DNA of 64,000 nucleotides from Mobula hypostoma (Eukaryota), in assembly GCF_963921235.1 (NCBI RefSeq), contig NC_086100.1, forward strand, positions 178,498,001 through 178,562,000, written 5' to 3'. Of this stretch, positions 13,349-57,538 are shown in pieces. How positions within the stretch are numbered: the first letter of the stretch is position 1; the number at the start of each line of letters is the position of its first letter. The position numbers were made by a program, and so were the translations under genes. The notes under the pieces are model-generated. The model was not told where the DNA came from. It did no database searches and worked only from the letters and a program-made list of their open reading frames with translations.

Positions 13349-13399
13349 CTTATTGCACTGTATCCTTGGGTGAAAGTTTGGGAGGCAAAGGTTTATCAT
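13349..13399 (-). CDS. UBOX5: UBOX5 first coding exon (MINLCLPNFHPRIQCNK); the exon probably spans 13349-13441 including 42 nt of 5' UTR
   Basis: Matches the UBOX5 N-terminus (human MVINLCLPQFRPRIHCNK as recalled); donor AAG|GTATCT; strong acceptor ttttttccccttcattacag| ending at 13442. Confidence 0.9.
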
Positions 13400-34511: not shown

Positions 34512-34700
34512 CTTCAAAGCACCTCCAAGCCTGACTCCACAGGCCTCGCCAGCTTGAGGCCTCCACACATGCGCATAGAGCCCTGTACTCAGCGCGTGCG
34601 CATAAGGGATCGCTGCCGGCGTTCCGTGTGCGCGTGCGCACTTTCCCGGCTGGTGGACGGTGGCTATCTGCTCGTGTTTCCACGTCCCTCCCTCTCCCCC
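34512..34700 (-). promoter_or_regulatory. Putative shared promoter and non-coding exon 1 of UBOX5/FASTKD5
   Basis: Non-repeat CpG-dense patch upstream of both genes; NRF1-like GCGCGTGCGCA motifs at 34592-34602 and 34630-34640; minus-strand donor GAAG|GTAATT at 34512/34511. Confidence 0.6.
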
Positions 34701-34745
34701 CGTTTCTCCCCTAATTGATTCCTTCTCGAATATCTTCATGATTTA

Positions 34746-35230
34746 TTGAACATCGATTTCTCTAACTTCGAGCAGCCAATCCCCTCGATTCTGTTTTCCC
34801 TTACCTCATTTTTTTTCTGTCCCTCAACATCTGCCCATCACCCTCACATTCCAACTATTGGTTTTCCACCGGTTTCCTTTTATTCCATGGCCCTCTGTCT
34901 TCTTCAATCGGATTCCACCTTATTAAAGTTCAAAGTAAATTTATCATTTTAGTATGTAGATATTACCTAATACTACCTTGAGATTCATTTTGTTGCAGGC
35001 ATTTACAGGAAAAAGAACAGTACGATAGGGGGGAAAAAACCTCTTTTCATTTCCACCTATCACCTTCCAGCTTCTTATGTAATTACTTATCTTCTCCCCA
35101 CCCTCTTCAGCTCTACTCCCGTTCACATGGATCGATCTATCATCCACTAGCTGTTCCTGCAGCCCCCCTCACACATTTTAATGTACTTCTTTCTGGTCGT
35201 GATGAAGAACCTCAACCTGCAACATTTCAT
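34746..35230 (+). mobile_element. Degenerate Penelope-like 3' fragment
   Basis: Starts with NIDFSNF-coding sequence followed by a pyrimidine-rich tail like the 4.5-5.1 kb copy. Confidence 0.5.
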
Positions 35231-35783
35231 GGCAGTCTCGAGAAGACGAATCTTACAGTTGTAGACTGCAGACATACTTTGATAATAAATGAACCTTTGA
35301 ACTTTGTCATTTCCCTCTGTAGAAGCTGCCGGAGTACCCCGCCCAGCTCTGTAGTGTGTTGCTCCCTGCTTGGTTTTCTACACATGCACAGAAGTGCTGG
35401 TTGGGGTTTCTCAGCAAATGCAGAAGGCCTCCTTAGCTCTAGGCAACCTCCACATGTGTATCGCTGCCTCCTGTTGTGACGTTTGGGAGTCTCCCCTTAC
35501 AGGCCTGCTGGTGCCACTGGGGGAGCGCAGTGTGTCAAGGAGCATCTGTGAGAGGAAAGAATTCGGGGTCGCAAGCAGAGAGGCAAAGCGGCCAGCATAG
35601 CGAGAGGAGCAGGAGTGACAATTAAAGAATCTGAGATGAATGGTAGATGGGGAGGGCTGTAGGATGACAGGCAGGTGGGGCACCATAAGGAATGAGCAGG
35701 GGTGGAGTTGGAAGACTGTGGAAGGTGAACAATAGATCGAGGCAGACAAAGAGAGAGAGGGAAAAGACAACAGATGGAGTAAG

Positions 35784-36064
35784 CAACACACATCAAAGTT
35801 GCTGGTGAACGCAGCAGGCCAGGCAGCATCTCTAGGAAGAGGTACAGTCGACGTTTCAGGCCGAGACCTTTTGTCAGGACTAACTGAAGGAAGAGTTCCT
35901 TCAGTCAACTCTTCCTTCAGTTAGTCCTGACGAAGGGTCTCGGCCTGAAACGTCGACTGTACCTCTTCCTAGAGACGCTGCCTGGCCTGCTGCGTTCACC
36001 AGCAACTTTGATGTGTGTTGCTTAAATTTCCAGCATCTGCAGAATTCCTCTTGTCTGCGTTTTT
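35784..36064. mobile_element. Penelope-derived fold-back element with hammerhead-ribozyme motif
   Basis: 117-bp inverted arms (35781-35897 / 35907-36023) with a 9-nt spacer; flanking direct repeat AGATGGAGTAAG at 35772-35783 and 36065-36076. Confidence 0.8.
35922..35959 (+). ncRNA. Minimal type I hammerhead ribozyme motif
   Basis: TAGTC-CTGACGA-AGG(GTCTCGG)CCT-GAAAC-GTC^GACTG: stem I UAGUC/GACUG, CUGANGA and GAAA core, stem II AGG/CCU, palindromic ACGU in place of stem III, GUC cleavage triplet. Confidence 0.65.
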
Positions 36065-37059
36065 AGATGGAGTAAGGGAGTGTGAAGATGGGATACAGTT
36101 GCTGGAGGCAGATAAGTAGGGACACAAAGCATTACCAGACCTGGATTTGGAAAAGTGAAGGAGGTGAGAATGGGAAGAATAGGAGAGAGGGGATCTTTAG
36201 AAGTTGTAAAATGGCCAATTGCATTCTAACACCACTAGATGGAACACGATTATCATCTGAGAGTGTTGAGTCCAATTCCGTCACTGACAGATCGAGGGGT
36301 CTATTTCCTGCAGAGAACAGGAGATCACTGGGCAGGAGGATAAAGCAATTGCCATTACCAACGCCAAACACAAGGTGACCCTATGAAGGGGATTCATATG
36401 TAGTTCAATAAAAAGAAGGCAGAAACAAAATGTGCTACAACACACACAACACTGGAAGAATTCAACTGAATTCATTCAGTGCTTGGCATGTTGCTCTAGA
36501 TTCCAACATCTGACGTCTCCAGAAAAAATGCTACGAACCCTCTACAGTTCAGGCAGCAACCGTTGAGAGAAAAAACAGTCAGTATTCTAGATGAGAACTG
36601 GTGAATGATCGAGGCATAACAGGTTTTAAGCAGCCGTTAGATGGATGCAAATGACCCGTCAGTTTACATCTCAATACCGAGTAAATGGTCTTTGTTGTTT
36701 GTGGAAGCTTTCTGTCCTAAAACGTGGCAAGACACATATAAATTAAATGAACTTTATCCCCCAAGAGACAGTTGCAAGCATCCATTTAATCAACAAACCC
36801 CAAAAAGCAACACTTCTCATGAAAATGAAGCTTTTGTTGTTCTAGTGTACAGTGGGTATATAAAGAAACAGCTGATATGAACTAGTCATGTTCTAATCCA
36901 GGGGGCTGTATGATCAAGCAAGGAAATAAGTGATTCCCCTGTTTTAAGCCAAGAAGTCTTGCCGCCGCCGGCTACCCACTGAGGGGATGGTTAAACACGC
37001 TTTAGGGCGCCGATAAGTGGGGTCAAGAAAGTAACATTCGGGGCCCTCTCTCGCTCCCA

Positions 37060-37360
37060 CTTCGCTATTGCCCATTCCGGAGCTTTACAGAGAGGAGGAG
37101 AATAATGTAACTCACTTTGATTCATTCGGATGGAAACTTGTGCGGCATCAGTTCAAACACCAGAGAACACTGGGGTAGAAACCAGCAGCATGACATGGGA
37201 CTCCCATCGACGCGCTCAGGAGTAGGCAGATTTAGGGATCTATCGGGATTCTCCCTCTGAAGATCGTGGAGTACCCGATTCTGGGCTTTTAAAATTTCCT
37301 TGATGGCCAAAAGAAATGTGGCCAATTTCCGCAGCTGTTGTTCATACGAACTGACCAACT
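37060..37360 (-). mobile_element. Gypsy (sushi-like) gag remnant
   Basis: LPTPERVDGSP..CC.FL.QCSLVFELMPHKFPSE resembles a retrotransposon gag motif; cut by the adjacent CR1. Confidence 0.5.
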
Positions 37361-37361
37361 G

Positions 37362-38055
37362 ATCAGTGCTGGGTCCATTGTTATTTGTCATCTATATCAA
37401 TGATCTGGATGATAATGCGGTAAATTAGATTAGCAAATTTTCTGATGATACAAAGATTGGAGGTGTAGTGGACAGTGAGGATGGTTTTCAAAGCTTGCAG
37501 AGGGATTTGGACCAGCTGGAAAAATGGGCTGAAAAATGGCAGATGGAGTTTAATGCAGACAAGTGTGAGGTATTGCACTTTGGAAGGACAAACCAAGGTA
37601 GAACATACAAGGTAAATGGTAGGGCACTGAGGAGTGCAGTAGAACAGACAGATCTGGGAATACAGATACAAAATTCCCTAAAAGTGGCGTCACAGGTAGA
37701 TAGGGTCGTAAAAAGAGCTTTTGGTACATTGGCCTTTATAAATCAAAGTATTGAGTATAAGAATTGGAATGTTATGGTGAGGTTGTATAAGGCGTTGGTG
37801 AGGCGAAATTTGGAGTATTGTCTACAGTTTTGGTCACAAAATTACAGGAAGAATATTAATAAGGTTGAAAGAGTGCCGAGAAGGTTTACAAGGAGGTTAC
37901 CGGGACTTGAGAAACTGAGTTATAGAGAAAGGTTGAAAGGTTGAAGGGACTTTATTCCTTGGAGTGTAGGAGAATGAGGGGAGATTTGATAGAGGTATAT
38001 AAAATTATGATGGGTATAGATAGAGTGAATGCAAGCAGGCTTTTTCCACTGAGAG
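37362..38055 (+). mobile_element. CR1 RT C-terminal fragment
   Basis: SVLGPLLFVIYINDLD, LQRDLD.LEKWAEKWQMEFN.DKC. Confidence 0.88.
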
Positions 38056-38739
38056 AGGAGTGAATATCGCGGGAAAGTGAGAAAAATTGGCCCGACCCTC
38101 ACCTCTATTCCCTACACGCAGCCTTTCCAGCCCACCTGAGCTGGTGTTTAAATTGTCTAAACACAGAATTGCACCCCACATTTGGACCCACGCCGCGGCA
38201 CAGCAATACACTCAGGGTCTAGTCCTTGCCGTCCAGCCCAAGTCCATTCTTGACCTCTCTAAGTTCGCTTAACGCTTACAGCGATCCAATCTTGCACCCA
38301 GCTTAGGTGGCTGGGGATCACATCTTCTCTGCCTCGACTCCTCCTCCCTCCAAGTCCATCTCCAACAGTGTCGCCATCTCCGTCTCAAACATGTTATACT
38401 TTGACTTTCAGTCAGCTTCACTTTTGCTTGCATCTTTATTGTTTGCCACAATTTACTTCAGAAAATGAGTTAGTAATAAGTTTTCAGTCAAATTACTTGC
38501 CTTTTGAACTACCAGTAAGCTGTCACTCGCCTGACACAGAATGCTCTGAAACTCTCTGCTTGAAGGACTGGTTGAACTGAATGTGATATTGAAAAATTGT
38601 GACTTACAGTGTTACGGGTCAAGTGTGGGAAATATGAATTAGGCTGCATGCCTCCTTATGATACATATCTGGATGATGTGCTGAATTGCCCCCATCTGTC
38701 TTGTAATTTTTTTTCTATTTTGTGATCTCCTATAGTAGA

Positions 38740-38975
38740 GTAGAGTAGATATACTTTATTGATCCCGAGGGAAACTGGGTTTCGTTACAGCCGCACCAAC
38801 CAAGAATAGAGCGTAAATATGGCAATACAAAAACCACAAACAATCAAACAACAGAATGCAAACTATGCCAGATGGAAAATAAGTCCAGGACCAGACTATT
38901 GGCTCAGGGTGTCTGACCCTCCACGGGAGGATCTGCAGGTTCGATGGCCACAGGCAGAAATGACCTCCCGTGCCA
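38740..38975 (-). mobile_element. Rex1-like 3' end fragment
   Basis: Shares ccaggaccag..tattggctcagggtgtctgaccctcc with 45465-45505. Confidence 0.65.
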
Positions 38976-40113
38976 TAGACCAGCATGAGAGTTCTATTTG
39001 GCCTCTAACCTCTCTTTGAAGAAAGAACTTGGTCACAAAGCTCCCAAATTTAGCTTAAATCATGTGAGCTAGTGAACCATTAATCTATTCTTGTCATTAA
39101 CAAAAAAAAAGAGAATGGTAATTTTCTCATTTCCATTTCTCTAACAACCAAGTCCTACACTTTCTTTTTCATAATCGGACCGAAAACCCAAACATCACCA
39201 TTTTTTCCTTCAGTTTGATTTATAGAATCATAGAAACATAGAAAACCTACAGCACAATACAGGCCCTTCGGCCCACGATGCTGTGCCGAACATGTACTTA
39301 CTTTAGAAATTACCTAGTGTTACCCATAGCCCTCTATTTATCTAAGCACCGTGTATCATGAATGAATGAATATTAAGAATGGATTTGAGCCAAAGATCAG
39401 GCATGCTCTTATTGAGTGATGATGGTACACAGTTGAGAGCTCAATAGCCTGTTCCTGATCCTATTTCCTACATTCACAAGCTGACTTTTGGAACAGAGTT
39501 ATCCCCAACTTGAGTTTTTTTTCTTTTTGATAAGCAGTGAAAAGAGTGTTTTGGATGCATTGCTCTAGACTCCTTTGGAAATGCATTTCACTGGTCTGGT
39601 GGCTGTGGTATATTGGTTGTTCTGACTGAAAGGCAAATCCAGCAGCTTCACCCAAAGTTAATGTTGTACCTTTCATTCACTCTGCTGTGGTTCTTCACAT
39701 TGGGATTTTGTTATCGTGAACAACATTATTCTGAAACTTTCAAAGTCTTTGAAACTCTTTCGATGTTCAGTCCCACTTCCTACTTAATTATTTCGTGATA
39801 CTTTTAGCCCCAAAGACTTTTTTCTAAATCACAGTAATTTGAACTATTAATTTTCACTTTACCCTTGATTATGATGACCTTTATGCATTAAAGTACAAAA
39901 GTAATGCTTAATTGGAAAATGATATTCTGATTGGAATTATGCGTTGAATAAATTAAGTACTTATAAAATTAAAATGTTGAGGTTATGGAGTGACCTCAGG
40001 TGAATTGTGAGTAGTACAGTTTGAGAATTCATTATAATAGTTTAGAAAATATAATCAGAATTCAACAAATTAGCGAAGTTAATAAATTCCGGCGCACTGA
40101 ACATTTTCGTGGG

Positions 40114-40121
40114 TATAAAAA
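40114..40121 (+). promoter_or_regulatory. TATA box of the oxytocin-family gene
   Basis: TATAAAAA starting 78 nt upstream of the ATG in non-repetitive sequence. Confidence 0.75.
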
Positions 40122-40191
40122 GAGAGCAGACGGGAAGTTGCTCAGAACAGTTTGGAAGGCTTCCTGTGTCCAGATACACCAGGAGAACATC

Positions 40192-40311
40192 ATGCAGTCT
40201 ACTTGCCTCATCGTTGCACTCCTCTGTTTCATCTCCTTCTCTTCAGCTTGCTACATCAACAACTGCCCCATTGGAGGCAAAAGATCCGTCCTGGACATGG
40301 AGATCAGACAG
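40192..40311 (+). CDS. OXT: Oxytocin-family prepro-hormone, coding exon 1 (signal peptide, nonapeptide CYINNCPIG, GKR, start of neurophysin)
   Basis: ATG at 40192; MQSTCLIVALLCFISFSSA-CYINNCPIG-GKR-SVLDMEIRQ followed by donor CAG|GTAAGG. A 40-codon phase-0 exon as in vertebrate OXT/AVP genes; neutral residue at position 8. Confidence 0.96.
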
Positions 40312-40789
40312 GTAAGGAGTAAATTTCTTCACATCTTTGATAATAATGCCTTGTAAGGGAAAAACACCTTTATTTTTCAAAAGACTTTTTTACATTGGAA
40401 AACCAGTGCAAATATTGAAATTTCTCTTGACTTGAAGATCATACAGGGTTCTTTTCATGTTCCACAGAGATTAATTCAGATGGTTCTTAAGCAAGTGTGG
40501 TTTCTAACCAGGTGGTCTGTGTTGTAAGAATCAGTGATCTGACCTTCTTTCGTAAAGACACTGAATTCAAACCCTCCCATCAAAACCCGTGGCTTCAGTG
40601 TGTCATTGAAAATGATACTTGACACTCCAAACAGAGAGGAAGAGTTTTTTGCAATTCCATAAAATTATTAATTCTAAAATTATCTTATGGAAACTTACTA
40701 AATAATTCTGAGAAAGGTAGAAGTTTCAGTGCTCGGTTATGTCTAACCAAAGTGCAGGGTGATGTAATTGGAATAAATGTACATAATTC

Positions 40790-41330
40790 ACAACCACTGA
40801 CATCGAGCTGGGGGTTCACTTTAAGAGGCTGCTCTGACATGATGGTGGTACTACATAAAGATTTGCTGGCACATTTTTGGTGTTTAGGTGTTGGAGTTCA
40901 ATAAAATGTGCTGTGGGTTCAATAAAACATAAAATGCCTCATTTTGTTTTATTTGTTAAACCTACATTGGTGACCCAATGCGTTAGAACGATTCCAGAGT
41001 TATTGAACATGTTGCCCAACACAGTTGCTTTGAAACTGCTGGAGTTTTGTGAGCAAAATGCTGTCACTTGGTTTCTACAAGAAATCACAGCCGATGACAT
41101 CAAATTCTACTACACGGTGGAGTCCCTCAGCAACCCCATGGCTGTGAGATTGTTAAGTGAGCTTGAACACAATAAGTACTGATGGCTGAAAACTCAACTT
41201 TTATAGACTTTTGGGCTATCGGAGCTTGAGTGCGCCAAACAGTTGCTCCCCTTGCCTAGCTTTGGCAATACGAGGCCCTTGGAGCTAATAGACCACAAGC
41301 TGTCTCTCCTTGGAAATCAGAATTGTTGTT
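40790..41330 (+). mobile_element. Old Gypsy element 5' part (LTR remnant, PBS, gag start)
   Basis: LTR ends ...cctaCA at 40966 followed by TGGTGACCC; gag-like VALKLLEFCEQNAVTWF; a matching LTR remnant recurs at ~49600-49682. Confidence 0.55.
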
Positions 41331-41337
41331 TTATTTT

Positions 41338-44300
41338 TCTTTCTTTCTTTTTAAATCTTTTTATTAATTTTCCAAAATTATAAACAGAATAACAATATTA
41401 ATACAGAGAGATTGGAATAATCATATTGTCGATAAGCATGTACAAAAAAAGATTTCAAATAGTACAAGTATAATAGTCTTCCAAACTCTTAATATAATTA
41501 ATCATAGAGAAAAAAAGAAAAAAAACAAAGAAAACCCCCCAAAAAAACAAACAAAAAACTAAATGCTAAACCCAAAAAAGAAAGCAAATGAAACAAAACA
41601 AAGCTAGACCATTATCTTAAATTGAACACGTCCAGTAATGTCGTCAACTCTGCTCATATATTTTAAGTTAATAAGAAGGATTCAGAAAGGTCAAATTACA
41701 TCGTATGAAAATGTTGAATAAATGGTTTCCAAGTCTTTTCAAATTTAACCGAAGGATCAAAAATGTCACTTCTGATTTTTTCTAAATTTAAACATGATAT
41801 AGTTTGGGAAAACCATTGAAATGTGGTAGGAGGATTGTTCTCTTTCCAGTTCAATAAAATGGATCTTCTTGCCATTAAAGTAACAAATGCAATCATCCGA
41901 CAGGCTGAAGAGGATAAAAATCTATGTTCTGCCATTGACGAACCGAAAATTGCCGTAATAGGATGGGGTTGTAAATCAAAACGCAAAACTGTTGAGATAA
42001 TATCAAAAATATCTTTCCAAAAGAGGACAGGACCAAAACATATGAGTTAAAGAAGCCACCTCAGAGTGACATCTGTCACAAATAGGGTTTATATGGGAAT
42101 AAAAATGGGCTAATTTATCTTTATACATATGGGCCCTATGCACTACTTTAAATTGTATTAGCGTATGTTTGGCACATATAGAGGAGGAACTAACTAATTG
42201 AAAATTTTTATCCCATTTCTCTATAGGTAGGCAAAGTTAAAGTTCCCTTTCCCATTAATTTTTAATTTTATCAGATATACCTGGCTGTAATTTCATAATT
42301 ATATCATAAATAGATGCTATTAATCCCTTCCGAAAAGGATTTAAACCTAAAATTTTATCGATGATCTCAGTAGGGTATGAGATTGGGAAGGTAGGCAGCA
42401 TGGTATTTAAAAAGTTTCTTATTTGTAAATATCTTAAAAAAAGATAGGATCTGGGCAAATTAAATTTATTAGATAACTGTTCAAAAGACACGAAACAGTT
42501 ATCCAGAAATAAGTCACAAAAACATGTTATACCTTTCATTTTCCATATCAAAAAGGCATGATCCATAACTGAGGGTTGAAAAAAATTTAGATATAATAGA
42601 GCTTGATAATATAAATTTGTTCAAACCAAAAAATTTACGAAATTGAAACCATATTCGTAATGTATGTTTAATTATTGGATTAACCATTTGTTTATTCAAT
42701 TTAGATAGTACAAAAGGAAGAGAAGTTCCTAAAATGGAAGCCAAAGAGAACCCTTGTGCAAAGTAGCCTTCAAGGTTTACCCAATGTCGACTTGGAATTA
42801 TATTCCAATTTTGTGTCCAAAATATTAATTGCCCAATAATAGAATCTTAGATTAGGCAATGCTAAACCACCATCTTTCTTGGACTTCTGTAAATATTTTT
42901 TACTTAACCTGGGATTTTTGTTCTGCCATATATAGAGGAAATTTTAGAATCAGTAGTATCAAAAAAAAAGATTTAGGAATAAAAATTGGTATAGCTTGAA
43001 ATAAATATAAAAATTTAGGTAAAATAATAATTTTAATAGCATTAATTCGGCCAATTTGTGATAGAGACAATGGGGACCACTTAGTAATCAGTTGTTTAAC
43101 CTGACTAATTAACGGTAAAAGGTTGAGCTTGAATAAATCCTTATGTCTCTTAGCAATTTTAACTTCCAAATAAGTAAAATAGTCAGTAATCAGTCTGAAT
43201 GGAGAACATCTATAAATGGGAGCCTGCATATTTAATGGAAGAAGTTCACTTTTACCTAGATTCAATTTGTAACCAGAAAAACTAATGAACTGAGCAAGCA
43301 GAGTTAATACTGCCGGAATAGAGTCCCCCAGGTTAGAAATATATAATAGTAGATCATCTGCATATAGTGATAATTTATGTGCCTCATTTCCACGGGTAAT
43401 ACCAAATATATTAGGGGAGTCACGATTAACAATAGCTAGCGGTTCCAAGGCAATGTCGAATAGTAGTCGACTAAGAGGGCAACCCTGCCTAGTACCACAG
43501 AATAATTGAAAGAGGGGAGATCTTTGATTATTAGTAAATACCGAAGCCAATGGAGTAAGATATATCAATTTAATCCAAGATATAAAATTCCGACTAAAAT
43601 TAAATTTCTCAAGCGCATTAAACAAATATGTCAATTCAACTCTATCAAAGGCTTTCCCAGCGTCCAATGAAATGACACATTCTGGAGTTCTGGGTGAAGG
43701 GGTATAAACAATATTCATTAATCTCCTAATATTAAAGGCAGAGTAACGATTTTTAATAAATCCAGTCTGATCAGCAGAAATAATTTGAGGTAATACATTC
43801 TCCAATCTCATTGCCAATATTTTAGAAAAAATCTTAGAATCTACATTCAACGAAGATATAGGCCTATAAGATGCACATTCTATAGGATCCTTATCTTTTT
43901 TAAGAATTAGGGAAATAGAAGCTCGATAAAAAGATTGTGGTAATTTACCTATAGATACCTAAAAATTCTACATAGCCAAGGAGTCAGTGTAGTAGGGAAA
44001 AATTTAAAAAATTCTGCTGTATATCCGTCTGGGCCAGGTGCTTTACCTGAGTTCATCGAAAGAATAGCATTTTTTATTTCTTCTACCGTAGTAGGTACAT
44101 CTAGTTATAAACGTTCATTGGATGATAATTTTGGAATATACAATTTCTTTAAAAAATCATGCATTATAGTGGAGTCATCAGGAAATTCTGATTGATATAG
44201 GGAGGTATAAAATTCTTGAAAAGATTTATTTATCTCATCATGGTCAACTGTCAGAGTACCATCTTTTTTACGTATCTTGCTTAACTGAAGCCGATTTTAA

Positions 44301-46928: not shown

Positions 46929-46929
46929 A

Positions 46930-48080: not shown

Positions 48081-48084
48081 GCAT

Positions 48085-49599
48085 GTAGACCACAGAAGTA
48101 GCAAAGGAGTTCTGTGTCTTTATGGATCTCACTCTGTCAGCAGCTGGCCCCCTCAGACATTCAACCATTCACTGTCTTTACATCATCAGAGCCCTGCCAC
48201 TCATCCAGCATCTGAGAAGTCTCTCCACCCAAGTCTCAGACTCCTCTTCCCTCTTGGGCGTGGGCTTCACTCCTGAGAACAATCTCAGCTTTCGATAGCT
48301 AGGAATCCCCACCTGTTCACTTTGCCATTTATTCGTCAGGAAGGTAAGGACTGATACCAACTCAGAATTCTCACTCTTTGCTGGAGGACTTGTTGGATGT
48401 TCCAAAGCAGACCACCACTTCCCCTCGCTAGGCACAAAGGAGAATAACCTGCCTTTGAAGTCCCTGCCCCCAGCTACGGGAGACTTGGCCTCTGATTTTG
48501 CACACTCGCCTACACTCTCCTCCTCTGGGAAAGTATGGACAACACACGGCACCCCACCCACCTCCCGAGGCCTCAGTAGTACCAGGCAGTTCCACTGCCA
48601 TTCTGTCAGTGCTAGTCTGAACTAAAACAACACCTTTGCCCATCATTCTATCAAACCTCTGTTCCACAATAGTAACTGCTCCTACTGATTTAACAGTACT
48701 TAAAGTTTGAATTAACAATTTGCTGGGAATACGAATGTCTACACCACTCAATGCACATGCATTCGTTACCGGTAACCCCATGGATTCGCACCTCCGCTCA
48801 ACCCTGTACAACATCCGTAACCACGTATCATAATCACTTTACCGAACAATAGTTTAACACAGGCTTAAACACACAACTCACTGGATCAATGCTCAGGGCA
48901 ATCACACAGCATCCAACGAAATCAATCCCAAATGATACCGCCACAATGAAATCCCCTGGTTTCCTGGGCTGCGTAAGTCTAGGGAAAACACTCTCCAGTC
49001 CCGCCAAACTCGTGGGATTGAGACAGCTGTCCAGCCCCAAACCCCGGTTTGTGTGGCTGCTGTGTAATTTGCTACCCTGTTACAAATTAGTGCCATGAAA
49101 TAACAGACAGCACCCTGCATACCATTAAAGGAATTATATTTATGAATCTTAACTTAACTAAAGGGTTAGTAAAGAAAAAACAAAAAGAAAAGGGCCCATT
49201 TTAATTGAACAGTCAAATATGCACAAATTGGAGCTCATCTTGAACTTCTCTGTCACACATGCACTGGGCCCTCGGTCAGCTGGAAAGCACACATCACCTT
49301 CCGATTGTCACTCGCAATCCATCTCGAACAAACATGTCCCCCACCGGGTCGCAACCTACGACCAGTTCTCCCCAGTGTCTTCTCTCTTCATCTCCAGCAG
49401 AACCTAAAAAACCTCCAAGACCAACCTTAGAGCCCCACACCAAGAAAACCTCCCCCTAATTGGGTGGCTCTCATTGCACATATTCCTTATCTTTAACAAA
49501 TAACCCAGAAAAGGCTGAAAGCAGAACAGACTGCTCTTACAGAACTGCTAAATGAAATACCTATAACAGAACAGTAAAGATGTGAACCAGGGCATTACA
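48085..49599 (-). mobile_element. Truncated Gypsy element: 5' LTR (49599-48947), PBS, PNMA-like gag start
   Basis: TGTAATGCCCTGG...GATTTCA then TGGCGGTATC; same LTR family as the solo LTR at 8260-8877; ORF 48428-48814 resembles a PNMA-type gag N-terminus. Confidence 0.75.
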
Positions 49600-49949
49600 G
49601 TAGGGTTTGGAATTCAATAAAATGTGTTTCAGGTTTCATTAAATATAAAACCCCTCACTTCATTTTATTTATGAAAAGCTATAAAAGTATCTGGAATAGA
49701 TTGGAATGAAATTCTATTTCTGAGATAGTTTAATGGTAGCTTGTGTGTAACTGGAAGCTGTCTGGTCGAAGAGTCAATAACTGAGAGGGATAATTTATAG
49801 GAACAGGCGATATTGATCAAATGGATAAACTGACCTAAAGAGTCGAAGTGGTATTAATCATCGCTCAACTGGAAGATGAATTTTCATAAGAGTTGGCTTT
49901 TAGTATATTCTAAAATGATCAAAATTTCATTTAACTTGTTCTTCTAAAA

Positions 49950-50945
49950 ATAGAACATAACATTTCGGAGCAGATTTAGGCCATTTGGCCGATTGGATCC
50001 ACTCCACAGTTTCATCACAGCAGATCCAACTTTCTCTCAATCCCAATCTCCTGCTTTCTCCCCGTATCCCTTCATGTCCTGACCAATCAAGAATCAATCA
50101 ACCTCTGCATTAAATATACATAAAGACTTAGTCTCTACAGCTGCTTGTGGCAGAGAATTCCACAGATGCACCACACTCTGGTTAAAGAAATTCCTCCTCA
50201 TCTCTGTTTGAAGAGGCCGCCCCTCTATTCTGAGAATGTGTCTTCTCGTTTTAGATACTCCCACAATAGGAAACATCCTCTCCCTATCCACTCTATCAAG
50301 GCTTTTTACCATGCAACGTGTTTCAGGGAGATCACCCCTCATTCTTCTGAATTCCGGTGAAAACAGGCTCGGGGCCATTACAAGCTCTTCATACGACAAG
50401 CCGTTCAACCTTGGATTCACAAAAAAATCTCACAAAAGTTAGTTGATTTGGCCCAGTGTATCACAGATAAAGCCCTCCCAACCATTAAGCTTATTGGCAT
50501 GAAACATAGACATAGAAATGCAGTATCCATTATCAAAGATCCTCACCACCCAGGCCATGCTCTTTTCTCACTGCTGCTGTTAGGTAGGAGGTATAAAGTG
50601 CCTCAGGACACGCACCAGCAGGTTCAGGAACAATTACTACCTCTCAGCCATCAGACTCTTGAGCAAAAGTGATGACTACGCTCATTCATTTTCTGATGTA
50701 CCCACAACCAATGGTCTCATTTTAAGGACTCTATCTTGTAATTTCATGTCCTTCCATTTCATGTTATTTCATACTTGTTATTTATTGCTATTTATTTATA
50801 TTAGCATTTGCACAGTTTGTTGTGCATTGATCCTGTTTACAGTTACTATTCTATAGATTTGCTAAGTATACCTGTAGGAAAATGAATATCAGGGTTGTAT
50901 GTGGTGACATGTCTGTACTCTGATAATAAATTTTACTTTGAAATT
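49950..50945. mobile_element. CR1 3' fragment (minus, ~49950-50420) and Rex1/Babar 3' fragment (plus, ~50445-50945)
   Basis: RRMRGDL..LWNSLP; SIIKDPHHPGHALFSLL. Confidence 0.75.
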
Positions 50946-51709
50946 TGAGAAAGTACAGGGTTAGTGTGAATGAGTACTTGATGGCTAGTACGGACTCATT
51001 GTGTCAAAGGGCCCGTTTCCAAGCTCTATGGTTCAAAAACTCTGTAAAACACTTCTCGTAAATTTAATCAGTGTCGCCAACATACAGAAATGGTGCGACA
51101 AGACTGACTGCAAATGTGGCGAATCTGGATCAAGAACTACAAACTGCTGGAGGAACTCAGCAAGTCGAGCGGCATCCGCGGATGCAAAAAGATCTCAACC
51201 CAACACTCCAGCTATCTCTTTGCCTCAGACGATGTTGCTCGACCTGCTGAGTTCCTCCAGAAATTTGTTCTGTTTTTCATAACAAAAAAGATTTTCTTTC
51301 AAACTCAGTAATACTGTAAGACAGTAGTCTTTTCATCGAGCAGAAGGTTCAAATGCCTGAAAGTACAGACCACAAAGCTCACAAACTGCTTCTATCCCAT
51401 TCTTATAGATTCACTTTATTTGTCACACGTACATCAAAACATCGAATCATACAGTGAAGTGCATGACAATAATGAACCAATTTACCAAGAATTGTTTATA
51501 ATTTGGAGTAAGACACAAATGCTGGAGGGCCAAGACTCTTTATCAGTTAATTCTTTATTCCTCTCGGTAGTTGCTGCCTGACCTGCTGAGTTGCCGGAGC
51601 ATTTTGTGTCTGTTACTCTGGATTTTGAGAATCTGCAGAATCTCTTGCGTTTGTGAACGGTCTTTGGGAGTGGCCTTGCTGATTCAATCTATTCTCTGCT
51701 CTTTCCCAG

Positions 51710-51914
51710 TGTATGCCATGTGGTCCTGGCAATCGGGGCCAATGCTTTGGAAACAACATTTGCTGTGGGGAGGAGATTGGTTGCTACTTCGGAACTTCTG
51801 AGACAGTGCGGTGCCAGAAGGAAGTCTACCTGCCCTCACCCTGTGAACCCTCAGGCAGGGTCTGTGGCAGGAATGGCGGAAAATGTGCCACATCAGGAAT
51901 CTGCTGCACTTCTG
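51710..51914 (+). CDS. OXT: Oxytocin-family precursor, coding exon 2 (neurophysin core)
   Basis: Acceptor ttctctgctctttcccag| then CMPCGPGNRGQCFGNNICCGEEIGCYFGTSETVRCQKEVYLPSPCEPSGRVCGRNGGKCATSGICCTS; donor G|GTGAGA; phase 0 in, phase 1 out. Confidence 0.95.
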
Positions 51915-52064
51915 GTGAGAGGCTCACCCTTTATCACACACTGTTTCAAAGAACATGACAATTTCAAAACAATCTTAGCTGTCAAGTTGAAAGGAATGTA
52001 TGGTCAATTTTGTCCTACAGGTCAATCATGCTACAGATATAGCTGGGAATCGATTATATTAGAA

Positions 52065-55000
52065 CATAGAACATAGAACAGTACAGCACAATACAGGCTC
52101 TTCAGCCCATGATGTTGTGCTGACATTTTAACCTATGGAGGAGTTAGGGGAGTTCCTCAATGAATAATTTGCTTCAGTATTCATCAGTGAAGGGGACCTT
52201 GTTGAATGTGAGTTCAGCGTAGAACAGGCTGATTTGCTGGAACATGGTGATGCTCAGAAAGAGTATGTGCTGGAAGTACTGAGAATTTTATGATAGCTAA
52301 CTCCCTGGAATAAGACAGGATATACCCCAGGTTAGCATGGGAAGTGATGGAAAAGATTGTTGTGTCTTTGGCAGTGTTCTTGTCTTCATCAGCGGCTACA
52401 GGTACAGTACCAGAAGATTGGACTGTGGCAAATGTTATTCCTTTGTACAAGAAAAGTAATGGGGATAATACAGGGAATCATAGACCAGTGAGCCTTATGT
52501 CAGTGGTGCGCAAACTATTAGAGAGGATGATTAGAGACAGCTGATGAGAATTTGGAGAAGCATAATCTGATTACGGATAGTCAACATGGCTTTGTGAAGG
52601 GCAGCTCATACCTCACAGATCTGATCGATCTTTTTGATGAAGTGATAACACAAATTGATGAAGGTACAGCATTGGATATGGTGCAGAATTTTAGCAAAGC
52701 ATTTGACACGGTTCCCCATGGTAGGCTTGTTCAGAAAGTTTGGCGGCATGTGATCCAGGGTTACTTGGCTGCATGAAATGCTTGTAAATCCTGTCTCTAA
52801 GAATCTTCTCCAGATCTTTATCCTCAGTGGTCCATCATTCCTAGGTCCCTCCCTGTTACCTGTCCTGAACAAAGCAATAACAATTGTAACCCTGCAGTTT
52901 TCCAAAATCATCACCAATTGCAGAGCAATCTCTTCCTACAGCAACATAAGTGGCCCCCAGGAACTTAACTATCCAAATGATTTTCAAACGTTGGAAAACA
53001 CCCTCTTTCTTAATTTCAACACGTTCCCGCATGTTAGTCTGTTCCACACTGATCTCACAGTTATCAGGGTCCATCTCACTGGTAAATATTGAAAGGCCTG
53101 GACAGAGCATATAGAGTGTATAGAGTGGATGTGGAGAGAATGTTTTCAATAGTAGGGGAGTCTAGGACCAGAGGGCACAGCCTTAGAATACAAAGTTGTC
53201 CCTTTAGAACAGAGATAAGGAGGATTTTTTTTTTTAGCCATAAAGAGGGTGATGAATCTGTGGAATTCACTTCAACAGACAGCTCTGGAGAGTAAGTCTG
53301 GTAGAGTGGTGGAAACAGAGTCACTGCCAGTATTTACAAAGCATCCAGATGAGAACTTGAATTGCCGAGACAGAGGAGGCTACACGTCAGGTGATGGAAG
53401 ATGGGATAACACAGAAGGGTCAGTGTGGATGAGTTGGGCCAAATGGCCGACTTCCATGCTATATGACTCTGTGACTAGTCACATAATGGATAGATAAGTC
53501 ATCTGTTGGCCATGGCACTGACCCAGTACCAGGGCTATCTGAACAAGTACATGGATAAGAGTCAAAATTCATATTGAAAAGTCAAAAATCAAAGTTAAGT
53601 TTATTATCAAATTATGTATATGTCATCATACACCACCCTGAGATTCATTTTCTTGCAGGCATTTAAAGGAAAATAAAGAAATACATCAGAATTAATGGAA
53701 ATCTATACATAAACATCAACTGATGTGCAAAATAATTTCCCTATTGAAGATTTTGCAGGGGCTGTGAACTGGAGCCCCAGGTCAGTAAGGGAAGGATCAG
53801 ATCAGAAGGTAGATCTCAGGGAAAGCATTGAAAGGGAAAATCGAAATAGCAGGTATGATGGGTCGGATAGTTTGAAGTGTGCATATTTCAATTCTAGGCA
53901 TATTAAGGGTCAGGGTGATGAACTGAGACCATGCATCAGTACATGAAACTACAATATTGTAGAAATTACTGAAACTTGGTTGAGAGAGGGGCAGGAGTGG
54001 GTGATTAATGTACCAGGTTTTTGAAGTTTTAGAAAAGATAGAGGAGAAGGAAAAGGGGAGGAGTGGTTAGTTGCACTACTATTCAGAGAAAATATCACAG
54101 CTGCACTTAGATGAGACATAATGGAGGGGTGAGACACTGAGTTCATTTGGAGGAAACTCAGGACTAAGAAGGGTGCAATCATGTTGATGGGACTGTACGA
54201 CGTACCCCTAATCACCACTGGGACACTGAGGAACAGATGATATAATCAGATTAAAGAAAGGCATAAAAATAATAGGGTTGTTGTCATGGGGGATTTCAAC
54301 TTACCTGAAGACACACACACAGCAATTCAGGAACAGCTTCTTCCTCTCTGCTATCCAATTCCTAAATGGACATTGAACCTATGAACACTAATTCACTTGC
54401 ACGATCTTTAATCTATTCAATATGCGTATACTGTAATTGATTTACTTACTTTTTTCCTTCTTCTTCTTCGTCTATATTATGTATTGCATTGAACTGCTGC
54501 TGCTAAGTTAATAAATTTCACGACACGTGCTGGTGATAATACTCCTGATTCTGATAAACTGGGACATGTTTTATGTAGGGGATTGAGATGGGGCAGAATT
54601 TGTTAAGTGTATCCAGGAGGATTTTAAATCAACATGTGAATAGTCCAACAAGAAGAGGGCCAAATTGGACCTGGTTTTCATTCATGAGCTTGGCCAGATA
54701 ACAGACCTTTCTGTGGGTGAACAGTTAGAGAACAGTCTGACCACAGCACTTTAACTTAGGCCTCGTGGGAGAATTTTAAGTTGGAGTTGAGCAAATGATG
54801 AGTGTATTAGGCAGGAACTAAATGTTGATTGTGAACTCTATTTCTCTGGCAAGTCCACATCAGACATGTGGAGGGTGTTCAAAGATCAATTGCACAGAGT
54901 AGCAGAAGGGTACGTTCCTGTTAAAAGGAAGGATGGGGATGGAAAGATAAAAGAACCTTGGATGTCCAGAGAGGCGATGAATTTAGTCAAGAATAAAAAG

Positions 55001-56780
55001 GAAAAATATGTAAAGCTTTCGAAGTTAGGATCAAAGGAAGCACATGATAAGTATAAAGAAGCCAGAAAAGAACTAAAGAAAAGTCCTTGGCAAGTCGGAT
55101 TAAGATGAATCCCAAGGTATTCTATATATACATCAGAGGAAGAGTGTTGGCCAGAAGAAACTACAGTATGATCAAGAACAGGGGAAGCAGACAAGCCATT
55201 TATCCTTGTTTCTCCTCCTGCCACATTCTGTGGACTCGGAACTGATTCTTGTTCTTGGTTAATCTAATCAGAACAACTGATTGTGGACACAGGAAGCTTC
55301 AGGTAATGACCGTAATGTGTATTGAAGAGCCTCGTAAAGAGTATTGAAGTGTATGTTCCCAGGGCCTGATGGAATTCACCCCAGGTTATTAAAGGAGGCA
55401 AGAAATGAGATTGCTGGGCCTTTGACCAGTATCTTTGTGTCCACTTGAGCCACAGGCGAGGTCCTGGAGGACTGACAAGTGTCTAACGTTGTACCTTTAT
55501 TTATGAAGGGAACATGGAAAATTCCTGGAAATATAGTCCAGTGAATCTCATGTCAGTTGCAGGGAAATTGCTGGAGAATATTCTTAGCAATAGGATTGTG
55601 AGCATCTAAAAACACATGGCCTAATTAAGGAAGCCAGCACAGCGTTCTGCATGTCAGGTCATGCCTGACCAAATTAATTGAGTTTTTTGACAAGGTGATG
55701 AGGGTAGGGTAGTGGATGTTATCTACATGGATTTCAGCAGGGCATTTAACAAAGTCTCTCATGGGAGGGTAATCGAGGAGATTAAGATGCATGGGACCTG
55801 CGGCGAATTGGCTGTTTGGATTCAGAACTTGCTTGCGCATAGAAGACAGAGGGTGGTGTTTGAGGGGACTTACTCAAGCTGGAGGTCTGTAATTAGTAGA
55901 GTTCCGCAGGGATCTGTGCTGGGACCTCTGCTGTTTGCTATGTATGTAGATGACCTGGATGAAAATGTACTTGGCTTGGTTCGTAAATTTGCGATGACAC
56001 CAAGACTGGTGGATTTGTGGATAGTGTAGAAGACTGGTAAAGAATACAGCACGATAAAGAGCAGTTGCAGATATGGGCTGAGAAATGGCAGTTGGAGTAC
56101 CCAGGTAAATGTGTGGTGTTGCAACTCATTAGGGCAAATGCAAGGAGAGAGTGTAGTGTTAAGGGCAAGATTCTTAACAGTGTTGCTGAGTAGAGTGATC
56201 TTGGAATCCAAATTCATAGCTCCATGAAGGTGGCTACATGGGTCAAAAAGATGGTTAAGAAGGCTTCCTTTCATTAGTTGAGGCATTGAGTGTTGGCGCG
56301 TGGCCAAGTGGTTAAGGCATTGGTCTGGTAATCTGAAGGTTGCTGGTTCGAGCCTCAGCTATGGTAGCATATTGTGTCCTTGAGCAAGGCACTTAACCAC
56401 ACATTGCCCTGCGACGACACCGGTCCCAAGCTATATCGACCCTGCTGCCTTTCCCTTGGACAACATTGGTGGCGTGGAGAGGGGAGACTGCCGGTCTTCC
56501 ATACAACCTTGCCCAGGCCTGTGCCCTGGAAACCTTCCAAGGCGCAAATCCATGGTCTCACAAGACTAACGGATGCCTATATATGAGTGCAAAAGTCAGG
56601 AGGTTATTTTGCAAATTTAAAAAACTCTGGTTAGGCTACGTATAAGGCAAATACCTTCAAGGCACATGGATATAAGGAATATGATGAGATATAGACATGG
56701 TGCAGGTTGGAGCGATGAGTATTTGGGTGCCTTTGATTTGCTATTTAGCAGGTTTGGGGCTGAATGGCCTGTTCCCATGC
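52065..56780 (+). mobile_element. Cluster of decayed CR1 fragments with inserted Rex1 tail and SINE (intron 2 of the oxytocin-family gene)
   Basis: VPEDWTVANVIPLYKK, FSKAFD, LKCAYFNSR, VPQGSVLGP and CR1 tail ttctatgttctat. Confidence 0.75.
56293..56583 (+). mobile_element. tRNA-derived SINE
   Basis: A box TGGCCAAGTGG, B box GGTTCGAGCC, core gtgtccttgagcaaggcacttaacc; TGAGTG duplication at 56287-56292 and 56584-56589. Confidence 0.85.
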
Positions 56781-57273
56781 TGTACTGTTCTATGTTCTAT
56801 CTGCTTTCAGACGATTTAAACAGAAGCTGCGTTATCTGACTAAAACTAATTTAAATCATAGCAATGTTGTCTCCTGAGACATGGAACTGGAATTATTATC
56901 CATTTTAGATTAGTGAATAATCTAATTAGTGAAATAGAACAGAGAATGCAGGAAATACTTGGCCACTTGGGCAGCAACCACAGAGAAACTACTAACACTT
57001 CAGGTCCATGTCTTTTTCCTCACAACAGGGAAAAGTGACAGTAAATGTTTGACCATAGCTCTGAGCCAGCACTGACCGCCTGGGCGAAGTGGCCTCATTT
57101 GAGATCATAAGCAATTATGAGAATGAGACCGTCTGACTTCAAATCCCAAAGTATCCTGCAGTCTCATTCTCGCAGTTCCTCCAGCTGAGTGAAGATGATG
57201 TAGTTATTGGAGATGGTTTATGATGGTGTATGTCAATTACAATAATGGCATTTGTGCTGTTCATTTATTACAG

Positions 57274-57347
57274 ACAGCTGCACCATGGATCCCACATGTG
57301 ACACCAGGAATATCTTCTCCTCAAGTTCAGGTGCACTTCTGGGTTAA
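57274..57347 (+). CDS. OXT: Oxytocin-family precursor, coding exon 3 (neurophysin C-terminus, no copeptin)
   Basis: Acceptor tcatttattacag|; the phase-1 join gives DSCTMDPTCDTRNIFSSSSGALLG* (TAA 57345-57347) and supplies the last 2 of the 14 neurophysin cysteines. Too short to appear in the ORF track. Confidence 0.9.
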
Positions 57348-57532
57348 ATCTGATCAATAGCACAAGATCAGAAACCCAGAGTCACTACCGAAAGATCCAG
57401 CCAATAATTGTTCAACACTACCTGTTTTTAATGCTGAGTAGATAAAAATTACAGAATGTAAAGATCTTCAAACTTGTATAGGTGTGTGTTAAAGAAATGT
57501 GAAATAGTGCAACACTTGTAAGAATAATTAAC

Positions 57533-57538
57533 AATAAA
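57533..57538 (+). terminator. Polyadenylation signal of the oxytocin-family gene
   Basis: AATAAA about 185 nt after the stop codon, followed by T-rich sequence. Confidence 0.7.

What the first reader, a model, noticed from the sequence alone, without database searches (positions are those of the whole stretch)
34512..57538. Nonapeptide gene lies on the 5' side of UBOX5/FASTKD5, head-to-head: probable relocated or second oxytocin paralogue
Seen: UBOX5 and FASTKD5 run on the minus strand from a likely promoter near 34.6 kb, and the oxytocin-type gene starts about 5.6 kb away on the plus strand. Established (from memory): in human the OXT-AVP pair lies beyond the 3' end of UBOX5, with AVP nearest and LZTS3 on the 5' side; several elasmobranchs have two oxytocin-type peptides. 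Inference: this gene is either an extra paralogue created by inverted duplication across UBOX5, or the UBOX5/FASTKD5 block has been inverted in this lineage. The first case predicts vasotocin and another oxytocin-type gene off the left edge.
Basis: partly seen in the sequence, partly recalled or inferred. Interest (0 to 1): 0.7.

Follow-up and report, generated by a model that had tools for sequence, protein, structure and literature searches.

The report
Ray oxytocin gene relocated beside UBOX5
In the devil ray the one intact oxytocin-type hormone gene sits head-to-head with the UBOX5/FASTKD5 promoter, as it also does in a sawfish but not in a skate, the whale shark or the elephant shark; the simplest cause is an old local inversion, which makes this a modest evolutionary curiosity and not a new gene.

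Summary
UBOX5 and the FASTKD5 gene nested in its first intron run on the minus strand from a CpG-rich promoter at about 34.6 kb. An intact three-exon oxytocin-family gene (CYINNCPIG-GKR-neurophysin, 132 aa) starts about 5.5 kb away on the plus strand. Its product is identical to RefSeq "neurophysin 1-like" of Mobula hypostoma.

I placed genes in three other assemblies. The smalltooth sawfish has the same head-to-head arrangement, with collinear non-coding blocks. In thorny skate and whale shark the oxytocin-type genes lie 113-120 kb away on the 3' side of UBOX5, as published for elephant shark. The arrangement is therefore real, derived, and older than the sawfish/devil-ray split.

Batoid oxytocin-type proteins form one clade, and M. 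hypostoma has one such protein in the retrieved clusters. This is therefore the relocated orthologue, not an ancient second paralogue.

In all three mapped species the locus lies 18-24 Mb from a chromosome end, with the oxytocin gene on the outer side pointing outward. Only FASTKD5/UBOX5 is flipped in the sawfish. This favours an inversion of the FASTKD5-UBOX5(-vasotocin) block.

Vasotocin, LZTS3 and GNRH2 could not be located in rays, so the mechanism is inferred. Expression is not shown. The gene is already annotated; I found no paper describing the rearrangement.

The parts
3954..4142 (-). UBOX5 downstream coding exon, lying inside this ORF (…VSHEQKLAQSLDSALASVL…)
   Evidence: The ORF appears. 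It matches the C-terminal region of UBOX5 as I recall it from the human protein. The final RING-like exon is not in the window.
6651..7982 (-). UBOX5 large coding exon, lying inside this ORF
   Evidence: Pfam DUF5918 (E 1.1e-63) and U-box (E 5.4e-19). It is 86% identical in DNA to the sawfish UBOX5 exon (L005).
13349..13399 (-). UBOX5 first coding exon (ATG, 17 codons, GT donor)
   Evidence: It is homologous to the annotated UBOX5 CDS starts in sawfish (L005:17253) and whale shark (L006:19653).
26695..29181 (-). FASTKD5 single-exon CDS (828 aa), nested in UBOX5 intron 1
   Evidence: It is 91% identical to Hypanus FASTKD5 and carries FAST_1, FAST_2 and RAP domains.
34512..34640 (-). Shared non-coding first exon of UBOX5/FASTKD5; the 5' limit is approximate
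   Evidence: The exon end and GT donor (TTGAAG|GTAA) are conserved with sawfish L005. GCGCA(C/T)GCGC-type repeats lie upstream. Contigs from probable RNA runs cover 34400-34797 but not the unique intergenic bins.
34600..34799 (.). CpG-rich promoter island of UBOX5/FASTKD5
   Evidence: GC 0.535 and CpG observed/expected 1.18, against 0.2-0.6 in the surrounding sequence.
36192..36442 (.). Conserved non-coding element upstream of the UBOX5 promoter, with a CTCF-like motif at 36232-36242
   Evidence: nhmmer gives E 5.5e-88 to sawfish L005 and E 2.7e-18 to skate L002, and it lies upstream of FASTKD5 in both. The alignment is and the motif is unique in the window. It marks this side of the intergenic DNA as ancestral UBOX5-upstream sequence.
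39592..40191 (+). Proximal promoter that travelled with the oxytocin-type gene (TATA box at 40114-40121)
   Evidence: Homologous to the 5' flanks of skate (E 3e-64), whale-shark OT-1 (5e-35) and OT-2 (4e-25) and sawfish (2e-144) oxytocin genes. It has no match at the vasotocin locus L008.
40192..40311 (+). Oxytocin-type exon 1: signal peptide, nonapeptide CYINNCPIG (40249-40275), GKR (40276-40284) and the neurophysin N-terminus
51710..51914 (+). Oxytocin-type exon 2: neurophysin core
   Evidence: Pfam Hormone_5, E 1.2e-23.
57274..57347 (+). Oxytocin-type exon 3 with stop codon; no copeptin
57533..57538 (+). Polyadenylation signal AATAAA
   Evidence: The 3' UTR is homologous to those of sawfish and skate.

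Best explanation
This is the devil ray's orthologue of the vertebrate oxytocin-family gene. It is intact and under purifying selection. It encodes [Asn4,Ile8]-oxytocin followed by GKR and a 14-cysteine neurophysin without copeptin.

It is not an additional ancient paralogue. Its unusual place, divergent from the UBOX5/FASTKD5 promoter and about 5.5 kb away, is a derived arrangement. It arose before sawfishes (Rhinopristiformes) and stingrays/devil rays (Myliobatiformes) split. Skates did not inherit it.

The most economical cause is one inversion of the block FASTKD5-UBOX5, probably with vasotocin. One breakpoint would lie upstream of the UBOX5 promoter, in the former LZTS3-UBOX5 spacer. The other would lie upstream of the oxytocin promoter, in the former vasotocin-oxytocin spacer. 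The oxytocin gene itself stayed in place and kept about 0.3-0.6 kb of its own conserved TATA promoter.

In the window the junction falls between 36.44 kb and 39.59 kb, a stretch now filled with repeats. The two genes keep separate promoters: a CpG-island housekeeping promoter and a TATA-box, presumably neuron-specific, promoter.

Shown: the gene structures, their orientation, the shared arrangement in sawfish, the ancestral arrangement in skate and whale shark, and the single batoid clade. Inferred: the inversion mechanism, the inclusion of vasotocin in the inverted block, and expression.
For: Gene integrity:
- The spliced product equals RefSeq P0093 and hits Hormone_5.
- It has 14 neurophysin cysteines, and dN/dS against sawfish is 0.127.

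Same arrangement in Pristis pectinata (record CM019856.1):
- The oxytocin gene is at 17,982,990-17,987,908 (-).
- FASTKD5 is at 18,017,817-18,020,333 (+).
- The UBOX5 CDS runs from 18,025,069 (+).
- Non-coding blocks are collinear on both sides.

Ancestral arrangement elsewhere:
- Amblyraja has FASTKD5 at 169.435 Mb (+) and oxytocin copies at 169.557 and 169.573 Mb (+). Strands were verified through overlapping loci.
- Rhincodon, in record order, has GNRH2(+), OT-2(-), OT-1(+), VT(-), UBOX5(-), FASTKD5(-).
- The published elephant-shark locus has the same content.

One orthologue, not two lineages:
- Batoid oxytocin-type proteins form a single clade with SH-aLRT 98. Shark duplicates are lineage-specific.
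- Only one M. hypostoma and one Pristis protein appear in the retrieved clusters.

Inversion rather than a jump:
- The locus lies 18.0 Mb (Pristis), 19.8 Mb (Rhincodon) and 23.6 Mb (Amblyraja) from a chromosome end.
- In all three the oxytocin gene is on the outer side and points outward.
- FASTKD5/UBOX5 points outward in Rhincodon and Amblyraja but inward in Pristis.
- No vasotocin exon lies between the two promoters in the window.

Breakpoint interval: the element at 36192-36442 is UBOX5-upstream DNA in skate too, and oxytocin-promoter homology to skate starts at 39592.
Against: - Vasotocin, LZTS3, GNRH2 and PTPRA were not located in any ray, so neither new junction has been seen.
- In whale shark GNRH2 ends 544 bp from OT-2. 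No GnRH2 decapeptide or GNRH2-like exon was found within 10 kb downstream of the sawfish gene or 6.6 kb downstream in the window. A gene that never moved might be expected to keep that neighbour.
- The chromosome-end argument assumes that no larger rearrangement occurred.
- Neurophysin genes are known to undergo gene conversion, which could make old paralogues look like one clade.
- No RNA run holds the gene's last exon, so activity is inferred from sequence conservation only.
Confidence: 0.55

Rival explanations
1. Duplicative transposition. An oxytocin gene copy, with about 0.6 kb or more of its promoter, was inserted in inverted orientation into the LZTS3-UBOX5 spacer of an ancestral ray. 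The original copy beside vasotocin was later lost or decayed.
For: - Elasmobranch oxytocin genes duplicate readily. There is an inverted pair in whale shark and a 16.4-kb tandem array in skate. Hypanus has two copies, and M. birostris has a degenerate copy on another chromosome.
- GNRH2 is absent from the 10 kb downstream of the sawfish gene.
Against: - It needs an insertion plus a loss.
- It also needs a further large rearrangement to explain why the oxytocin gene keeps its outer position and outward direction on the chromosome while UBOX5 is flipped.
- No remnant copy was retrieved for M. hypostoma or Pristis.
Confidence: 0.25
2. Ancient second paralogue. Two oxytocin-type lineages date from early elasmobranchs, one on each side of UBOX5, and different lineages kept different ones.
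For: - Classical peptide chemistry found two oxytocin-like peptides per elasmobranch species (from my own knowledge, and listed in PMC2656470).
- Most sharks have two annotated genes.
- Gene conversion could hide deep paralogy.
Against: - Both whale-shark copies lie on the 3' side of UBOX5.
- Duplicates cluster by lineage in the tree.
- The promoter and 3' UTR of the window gene are homologous to those of the 3'-side skate gene.
- Elephant shark has a single gene.
Confidence: 0.1
3. Assembly artefact. The junction between the UBOX5 promoter and the oxytocin gene is a mis-join across repeats.
For: Short-read contigs from two species cover every unique island of 34.4-40.1 kb, but none bridges the repeats at 34.99-35.27, 35.81-36.03, 37.39-38.02, 38.79-38.93 and 39.25-39.31 kb.
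Against: - The independently assembled sawfish genome has the same order and orientation, with collinear conserved blocks on both sides.
- M. birostris annotates the same 17.2-kb gene.
- The unique islands recur in the second Mobula species at 2-3% divergence.
Confidence: 0.03

Closest known systems
Elephant shark (Callorhinchus milii) neurohypophysial locus: ProSAPiP1/LZTS3, UBOX5, vasotocin, oxytocin, GNRH2, PTPRA (Gwee et al. 2009, PMC2656470)
   Same: The gene content and the three-exon structure are the same. The oxytocin-family precursor lacks copeptin in both. UBOX5 is a neighbour in both.
   Different: In elephant shark, oxytocin follows vasotocin tail-to-head in one 167-kb stretch that also carries UBOX5 and GNRH2. 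Here it lies at the 5' end of UBOX5 on the opposite strand, and the peptide is CYINNCPIG, not oxytocin.
Smalltooth sawfish (Pristis pectinata) 'neurophysin 1-like' XP_051897442.1 locus
   Same: The nonapeptide is the same, and the gene is head-to-head with FASTKD5/UBOX5. Promoter, intronic, 3' UTR and UBOX5-upstream blocks are collinear.
   Different: The sawfish gene spans 4.9 kb against 17.2 kb here. Its promoter-to-promoter spacer is about 25 kb against about 5.5 kb here. The devil-ray protein has a 6-residue longer C-terminus.
Teleost isotocin/vasotocin loci (pufferfish; Gwee 2008/2009)
   Same: The oxytocin-family gene is no longer the immediate tail-to-head neighbour of vasotocin.
   Different: In teleosts isotocin lies upstream of vasotocin on the same strand, with five unrelated genes between them, after extensive rearrangement. 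Here a single local event around UBOX5 suffices.
Eutherian OXT-AVP tail-to-tail pair, and the whale-shark OT-1/VT pair
   Same: A local inversion changed the relative orientation of the two hormone genes. Whale-shark OT-1 is tail-to-tail with vasotocin, as in placental mammals.
   Different: In those cases the oxytocin gene or a copy of it flipped and remained next to vasotocin on the 3' side of UBOX5.

Membership tests
Vertebrate oxytocin-family neurohypophysial hormone precursor | A signal peptide followed by a nonapeptide C-Y-x-x-N-C-P-x-G with a neutral residue at position 8 | tested here: met
   The 19-residue hydrophobic leader is followed by CYINNCPIG, with Ile at position 8.
Vertebrate oxytocin-family neurohypophysial hormone precursor | A Gly-Lys-Arg amidation and cleavage signal, then a neurophysin domain with 14 cysteines | tested here: met
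   GKR is encoded at 40276-40284, and there are 14 Cys after it. Pfam PF00184 scores 95.9 bits against a cut-off of 27.2.
Vertebrate oxytocin-family neurohypophysial hormone precursor | Three exons with conserved boundaries, and no copeptin moiety | tested here: met
   Exons of 120, 205 and 74 nt match the 120- and 205-nt first two exons in sawfish, skate and both whale-shark genes. The C-terminus ends 15 residues after the last cysteine.
Vertebrate oxytocin-family neurohypophysial hormone precursor | Orthology to other batoid oxytocin-type genes | tested here: met
   It falls in a single batoid clade with SH-aLRT 98. Its promoter and 3' UTR are homologous to the skate and sawfish genes. Gene conversion is a caveat.
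Vertebrate oxytocin-family neurohypophysial hormone precursor | Expression in hypothalamic neurosecretory neurons | tested here: inconclusive
   No listed RNA run holds exon 3 or the 3' UTR. The tissues of the probable RNA runs are unknown, and none was shown to be brain.
Canonical non-teleost neurohypophysial locus (UBOX5, vasotocin, oxytocin, GNRH2) | The oxytocin-family gene lies on the 3' side of UBOX5, downstream of vasotocin | tested here: not met
   The gene lies 5' of UBOX5 exon 1 on the opposite strand. No vasotocin exon is present in the window.
Canonical non-teleost neurohypophysial locus (UBOX5, vasotocin, oxytocin, GNRH2) | GNRH2 lies just beyond the oxytocin gene | tested here: inconclusive
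   It was not found within 6.6 kb (window) or 10 kb (sawfish) downstream. Sequence beyond that could not be reached.
UBOX5/FASTKD5 nested gene pair | FASTKD5 is a single coding exon inside the first intron of UBOX5, on the same strand, with a shared 5' exon | tested here: met
   FASTKD5 (29181-26695) lies between exon 1 (donor after 34512) and the UBOX5 ATG exon (13399). The sharing of exon 1 is inferred from the human gene model, which I recall from memory.
Bidirectional promoter pair | Divergent transcription start sites less than about 1 kb apart, sharing one promoter | tested here: not met
   The two starts are about 5.5 kb apart. One promoter is a CpG island and the other a TATA promoter, and repeats plus a conserved element lie between them.

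The most novel reading that the evidence does not exclude
Sawfishes and stingrays/devil rays represent an independent break-up of the vasotocin-oxytocin tandem, which is regarded as conserved in all non-teleost vertebrates. One inversion put UBOX5/FASTKD5 between the two hormone genes. It left oxytocin with only about 0.6 kb or less of demonstrably ancestral 5' flank, facing a housekeeping promoter across a conserved CTCF-like element. If oxytocin is still made in the right neurons, this is a natural deletion experiment. It would show that the proximal promoter, together with intragenic and 3' sequences, is enough for cell-type-specific expression.
Probability: 0.4. Interest if true: 0.5.

Novelty: new variant of a known kind. 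Interest (0 to 1): 0.35.

Why it matters
The order of genes around vasotocin and oxytocin is the main evidence used to name and homologise these hormone genes across vertebrates. It is described as conserved from lamprey to tetrapods, except in teleosts.

This locus shows that one large group of rays also broke the arrangement. Sharks and skates independently made inverted or tandem duplicates. Synteny-based naming in cartilaginous fishes therefore needs care.

The locus also gives a natural test of which flanking DNA the oxytocin gene needs. It does not reveal a new gene or a new mechanism. The gene is already in RefSeq under an uninformative name.

Tried and rejected
- **Neighbours in Mobula and Hypanus.** The look-up of encoding contigs returned no DNA and no coordinates for M. 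birostris or Hypanus sabinus because the assembly files are too large. Neighbours beyond the window could therefore not be read in the closest relatives. One look-up was not sent.
- **GNRH2 search.** I looked for the decapeptide by pattern and for GNRH2-like exons by tblastx, downstream of the window gene and the sawfish gene. Nothing was found beyond the shared 3' UTR.
- **Batoid vasotocin.** No batoid vasotocin protein turned up among the 90 candidates of the homology search. Its position in rays stayed untested.
- **Read support.** Logan short-read contigs do not bridge the repeats, so they neither confirm nor deny contiguity. Probable RNA runs show nothing over the oxytocin exons.
- **A false lead.** A match of sawfish L004:1220-1642 to DNA upstream of FASTKD5 in skate and whale shark looked like an inversion footprint. 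On alignment it is an interspersed repeat unrelated to the promoter.
- **RefSeq accession order.** It cannot serve as a proxy for gene order. Adjacent skate copies carry accession numbers about 8,500 apart.
- **Literature.** Hara et al. 2018, cited for oxytocin/vasopressin tandem clusters in sharks, is not held in the library. No paper contains CYINNCPIG, and none combining UBOX5 with oxytocin synteny treats rays.
- **Earlier scan notes.** They hold nothing on vasotocin, GNRH2, LZTS3 or PTPRA in this genome.

Full report
**What is in the window**

On the plus strand there is a complete oxytocin-family gene.
- A TATA box lies at 40114-40121 and the ATG at 40192.
- Exon 1 (40192-40311) encodes a 19-residue signal peptide, the nonapeptide CYINNCPIG, the GKR processing signal and the first nine neurophysin residues.
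- Exon 2 (51710-51914) encodes the neurophysin core.
- Exon 3 (57274-57347) encodes the C-terminus and the stop codon. AATAAA lies at 57533-57538.
- Introns are GT-AG.
- The spliced 132-aa product is identical to XP_062903408.1 "neurophysin 1-like" of Mobula hypostoma (P0093). It differs at one residue from the M. birostris protein.
- It matches Pfam Hormone_5, has 14 neurophysin cysteines and has no copeptin.
- dN/dS is 0.127 against the sawfish orthologue.

On the minus strand lie three elements of the UBOX5/FASTKD5 pair.
- FASTKD5 is one ORF (29181-26695) with FAST_1, FAST_2 and RAP domains.
- The UBOX5 start-codon exon is at 13399-13349.
- The UBOX5 large exon lies inside 7982-6651 and carries DUF5918 plus a U-box.

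A non-coding first exon ends at a GT donor after 34512. Exon end, donor and flanking GCGCA(C/T)GCGC-type repeats are conserved in the sawfish. The exon sits in a small CpG island at 34600-34799. Contigs from runs guessed to be RNA cover 34400-34797 but not the unique intergenic bins.

Two divergent genes have 5' ends about 5.5 kb apart. No other neurophysin-like exon exists in the 64 kb. The last UBOX5 exon and everything beyond it lie off the left edge.

**Is the arrangement real and unusual?**

Published work on the elephant shark describes one 167-kb stretch carrying ProSAPiP1 (LZTS3), UBOX5, vasotocin, oxytocin, GNRH2 and part of PTPRA. There vasotocin and oxytocin are tail-to-head, and the authors state that this order is conserved from lamprey to tetrapods and broken only in teleosts (PMC2656470). 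The 2021 nomenclature paper used only the elephant shark among cartilaginous fishes.

I placed genes on three chromosome-scale assemblies with the look-up of encoding contigs, which reports record coordinates and marks reversed loci. Overlapping skate loci confirmed that unmarked loci are on the plus strand.

| Species (record) | Gene | Coordinates | Strand |
|---|---|---|---|
| Whale shark (NC_063332.1) | GNRH2 | 19,766,593-19,769,785 | + |
| | Oxytocin-type OT-2 | 19,770,329-19,775,275 | - |
| | Oxytocin-type OT-1 | 19,798,919-19,804,570 | + |
| | Vasotocin | 19,828,102-19,836,258 | - |
| | UBOX5 CDS start | 19,887,535 | - |
| | FASTKD5 | 19,894,674-19,897,187 | - |
| Thorny skate (CM021366.1) | FASTKD5 | 169,435,213-169,443,648 | + |
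| | Glumitocin gene copy 1 | starts 169,557,097 | + |
| | Glumitocin gene copy 2 | starts 169,573,492 | + |
| Smalltooth sawfish (CM019856.1) | Oxytocin-type gene | 17,982,990-17,987,908 | - |
| | FASTKD5 | 18,017,817-18,020,333 | + |
| | UBOX5 CDS start | 18,025,069 | + |

In whale shark and skate the oxytocin-type genes lie 113-120 kb away on the 3' side of UBOX5. The two mapped skate genes belong to a 16.4-kb tandem array.

The sawfish has the same head-to-head layout as the window. Mobula and sawfish are collinear across the oxytocin promoter, introns and 3' UTR, and across FASTKD5, UBOX5 exon 1 and a 0.7-kb element upstream of it.

An independent assembly of a different order of rays thus shows the same junction, which makes a mis-join very unlikely. 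Short-read contigs could not bridge the repeats in the spacer.

**Paralogue or relocated orthologue?**

Cluster listings show that most elasmobranchs have two or more oxytocin-type genes. The copies group by lineage in a maximum-likelihood tree, and all batoid sequences form one clade with SH-aLRT 98.
- M. hypostoma and Pristis each contribute a single protein to the clusters.
- M. birostris has a second copy (P0094) on a different chromosome. It lacks the normal start codon, reads through the exon-2 donor and sits on a long branch. This looks like a recent decaying duplicate.
- The window gene's promoter and 3' UTR are homologous to those of the skate genes on the 3' side.

I conclude that this is the batoid oxytocin orthologue in a new place. 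Gene conversion among neurophysin genes is the caveat.

**How did it get there?**

Two markers bound the junction in the window. The element at 36192-36442 also lies upstream of FASTKD5 in the skate, which has the ancestral order, so it belongs to the old UBOX5-upstream spacer. Homology to the skate oxytocin 5' flank starts at 39592. The junction therefore lies between these points, in DNA now dominated by repeats.

The locus lies 18.0, 19.8 and 23.6 Mb from a chromosome end in sawfish, whale shark and skate. In all three the oxytocin gene is on the outer side and points outward. FASTKD5/UBOX5 points outward in whale shark and skate but inward in sawfish. A single inversion of the FASTKD5-UBOX5 block explains this.

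No vasotocin exon lies between the two promoters. The block therefore probably included vasotocin, which predicts vasotocin off the left edge on the minus strand.

The rival is an inverted insertion of a gene copy followed by loss of the original. It needs more steps, but it is favoured by one observation. GNRH2 ends 544 bp from whale-shark OT-2, yet it is not found within 10 kb of the sawfish gene or 6.6 kb of the window gene. I could not reach the neighbours that would decide this.

**Function**

The gene keeps its own TATA promoter. Of this, 0.3-0.6 kb is conserved with shark and skate oxytocin genes but has no match at the vasotocin locus.

The UBOX5/FASTKD5 promoter is a separate CpG island. 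Between the two promoters lies the conserved element, which carries a CTCF-like motif (36232-36242). The motif core is invariant in all three species, but the Mobula copy has a weaker 3' end. A boundary role is speculation.

No RNA run holds the oxytocin 3' exon. Activity is therefore inferred from intactness and purifying selection.

**Novelty**

The gene is annotated in RefSeq. I found no open paper that describes its position in rays or names the peptide, but subscription journals are not searchable here. It is a new variant of a well-known locus and of moderate interest to comparative endocrinologists.

Noticed in passing
L007, L008, L009 (whale shark NC_063332.1, 19.76-19.85 Mb): The whale shark has two oxytocin-type genes head-to-head, 23.6 kb apart. 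The inner one (OT-1) is tail-to-tail with vasotocin, the arrangement otherwise known from placental mammals. GNRH2 ends 544 bp from the outer copy. The two types (OT-1, OT-2) are conserved across carpet sharks in the tree.
   Followed up: partly
L001, L003 (thorny skate CM021366.1, 169.55-169.59 Mb): Glumitocin genes form a tandem array with a period of about 16.4 kb and 96-97% identity between units. Five near-identical proteins are annotated in Amblyraja. In Leucoraja one protein carries four accession numbers.
   Followed up: partly
P0094 (M. birostris, 232.9-Mb record; not in the window): A second, apparently decaying copy of this gene lies on a different chromosome of the manta ray. It has no normal start codon, altered neurophysin residues, and reads through the exon-2 donor into intron sequence like that at window 51915-51957. 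Whether M. hypostoma has it was not tested.
   Followed up: partly
window 40249-40275: The nonapeptide CYINNCPIG ([Asn4,Ile8]-oxytocin) is not peculiar to Mobula. The same peptide is encoded in Pristis pectinata, Hypanus sabinus (two genes) and Hemitrygon akajei. Torpedo and Narcine encode isotocin, skates encode glumitocin, and Rhinoraja encodes CYINNCPTG. No paper in the library contains the peptide string.
   Followed up: partly
window 57319-57347: The devil-ray and manta precursors end six residues later (…SSSSGALLG) than the 126-aa precursors of other rays and sharks.
   Followed up: no
window 40312-51709 and 51915-57273: The gene is bloated by retroelement insertions. It spans 17.2 kb, against 3.6 kb in skate, 4.9 kb in sawfish and 5.0-5.7 kb in whale shark. 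Intron 1 alone is 11.4 kb and holds several LINE-type ORFs on the minus strand.
   Followed up: no
window 36232-36242 within 36192-36442: A CTCF-like motif (CCACTAGATGG) sits in a non-coding element conserved in devil ray, sawfish and skate upstream of the UBOX5/FASTKD5 promoter. In the devil ray and sawfish it now lies between that promoter and the oxytocin gene.
   Followed up: partly
window 34000-40500: An Rfam scan at gathering thresholds found no RNA family here, hammerhead families included. An earlier first-reader note proposed a minimal hammerhead motif at 35772-36076. That stretch is an extremely high-copy repeat according to contig depth.
   Followed up: partly
window 34560-34660: The UBOX5/FASTKD5 promoter carries several GCGCA(C/T)GCGC-type palindromes (NRF1-like, from memory). 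They are conserved in the sawfish, which fits a nuclear gene for a mitochondrial protein.
   Followed up: no
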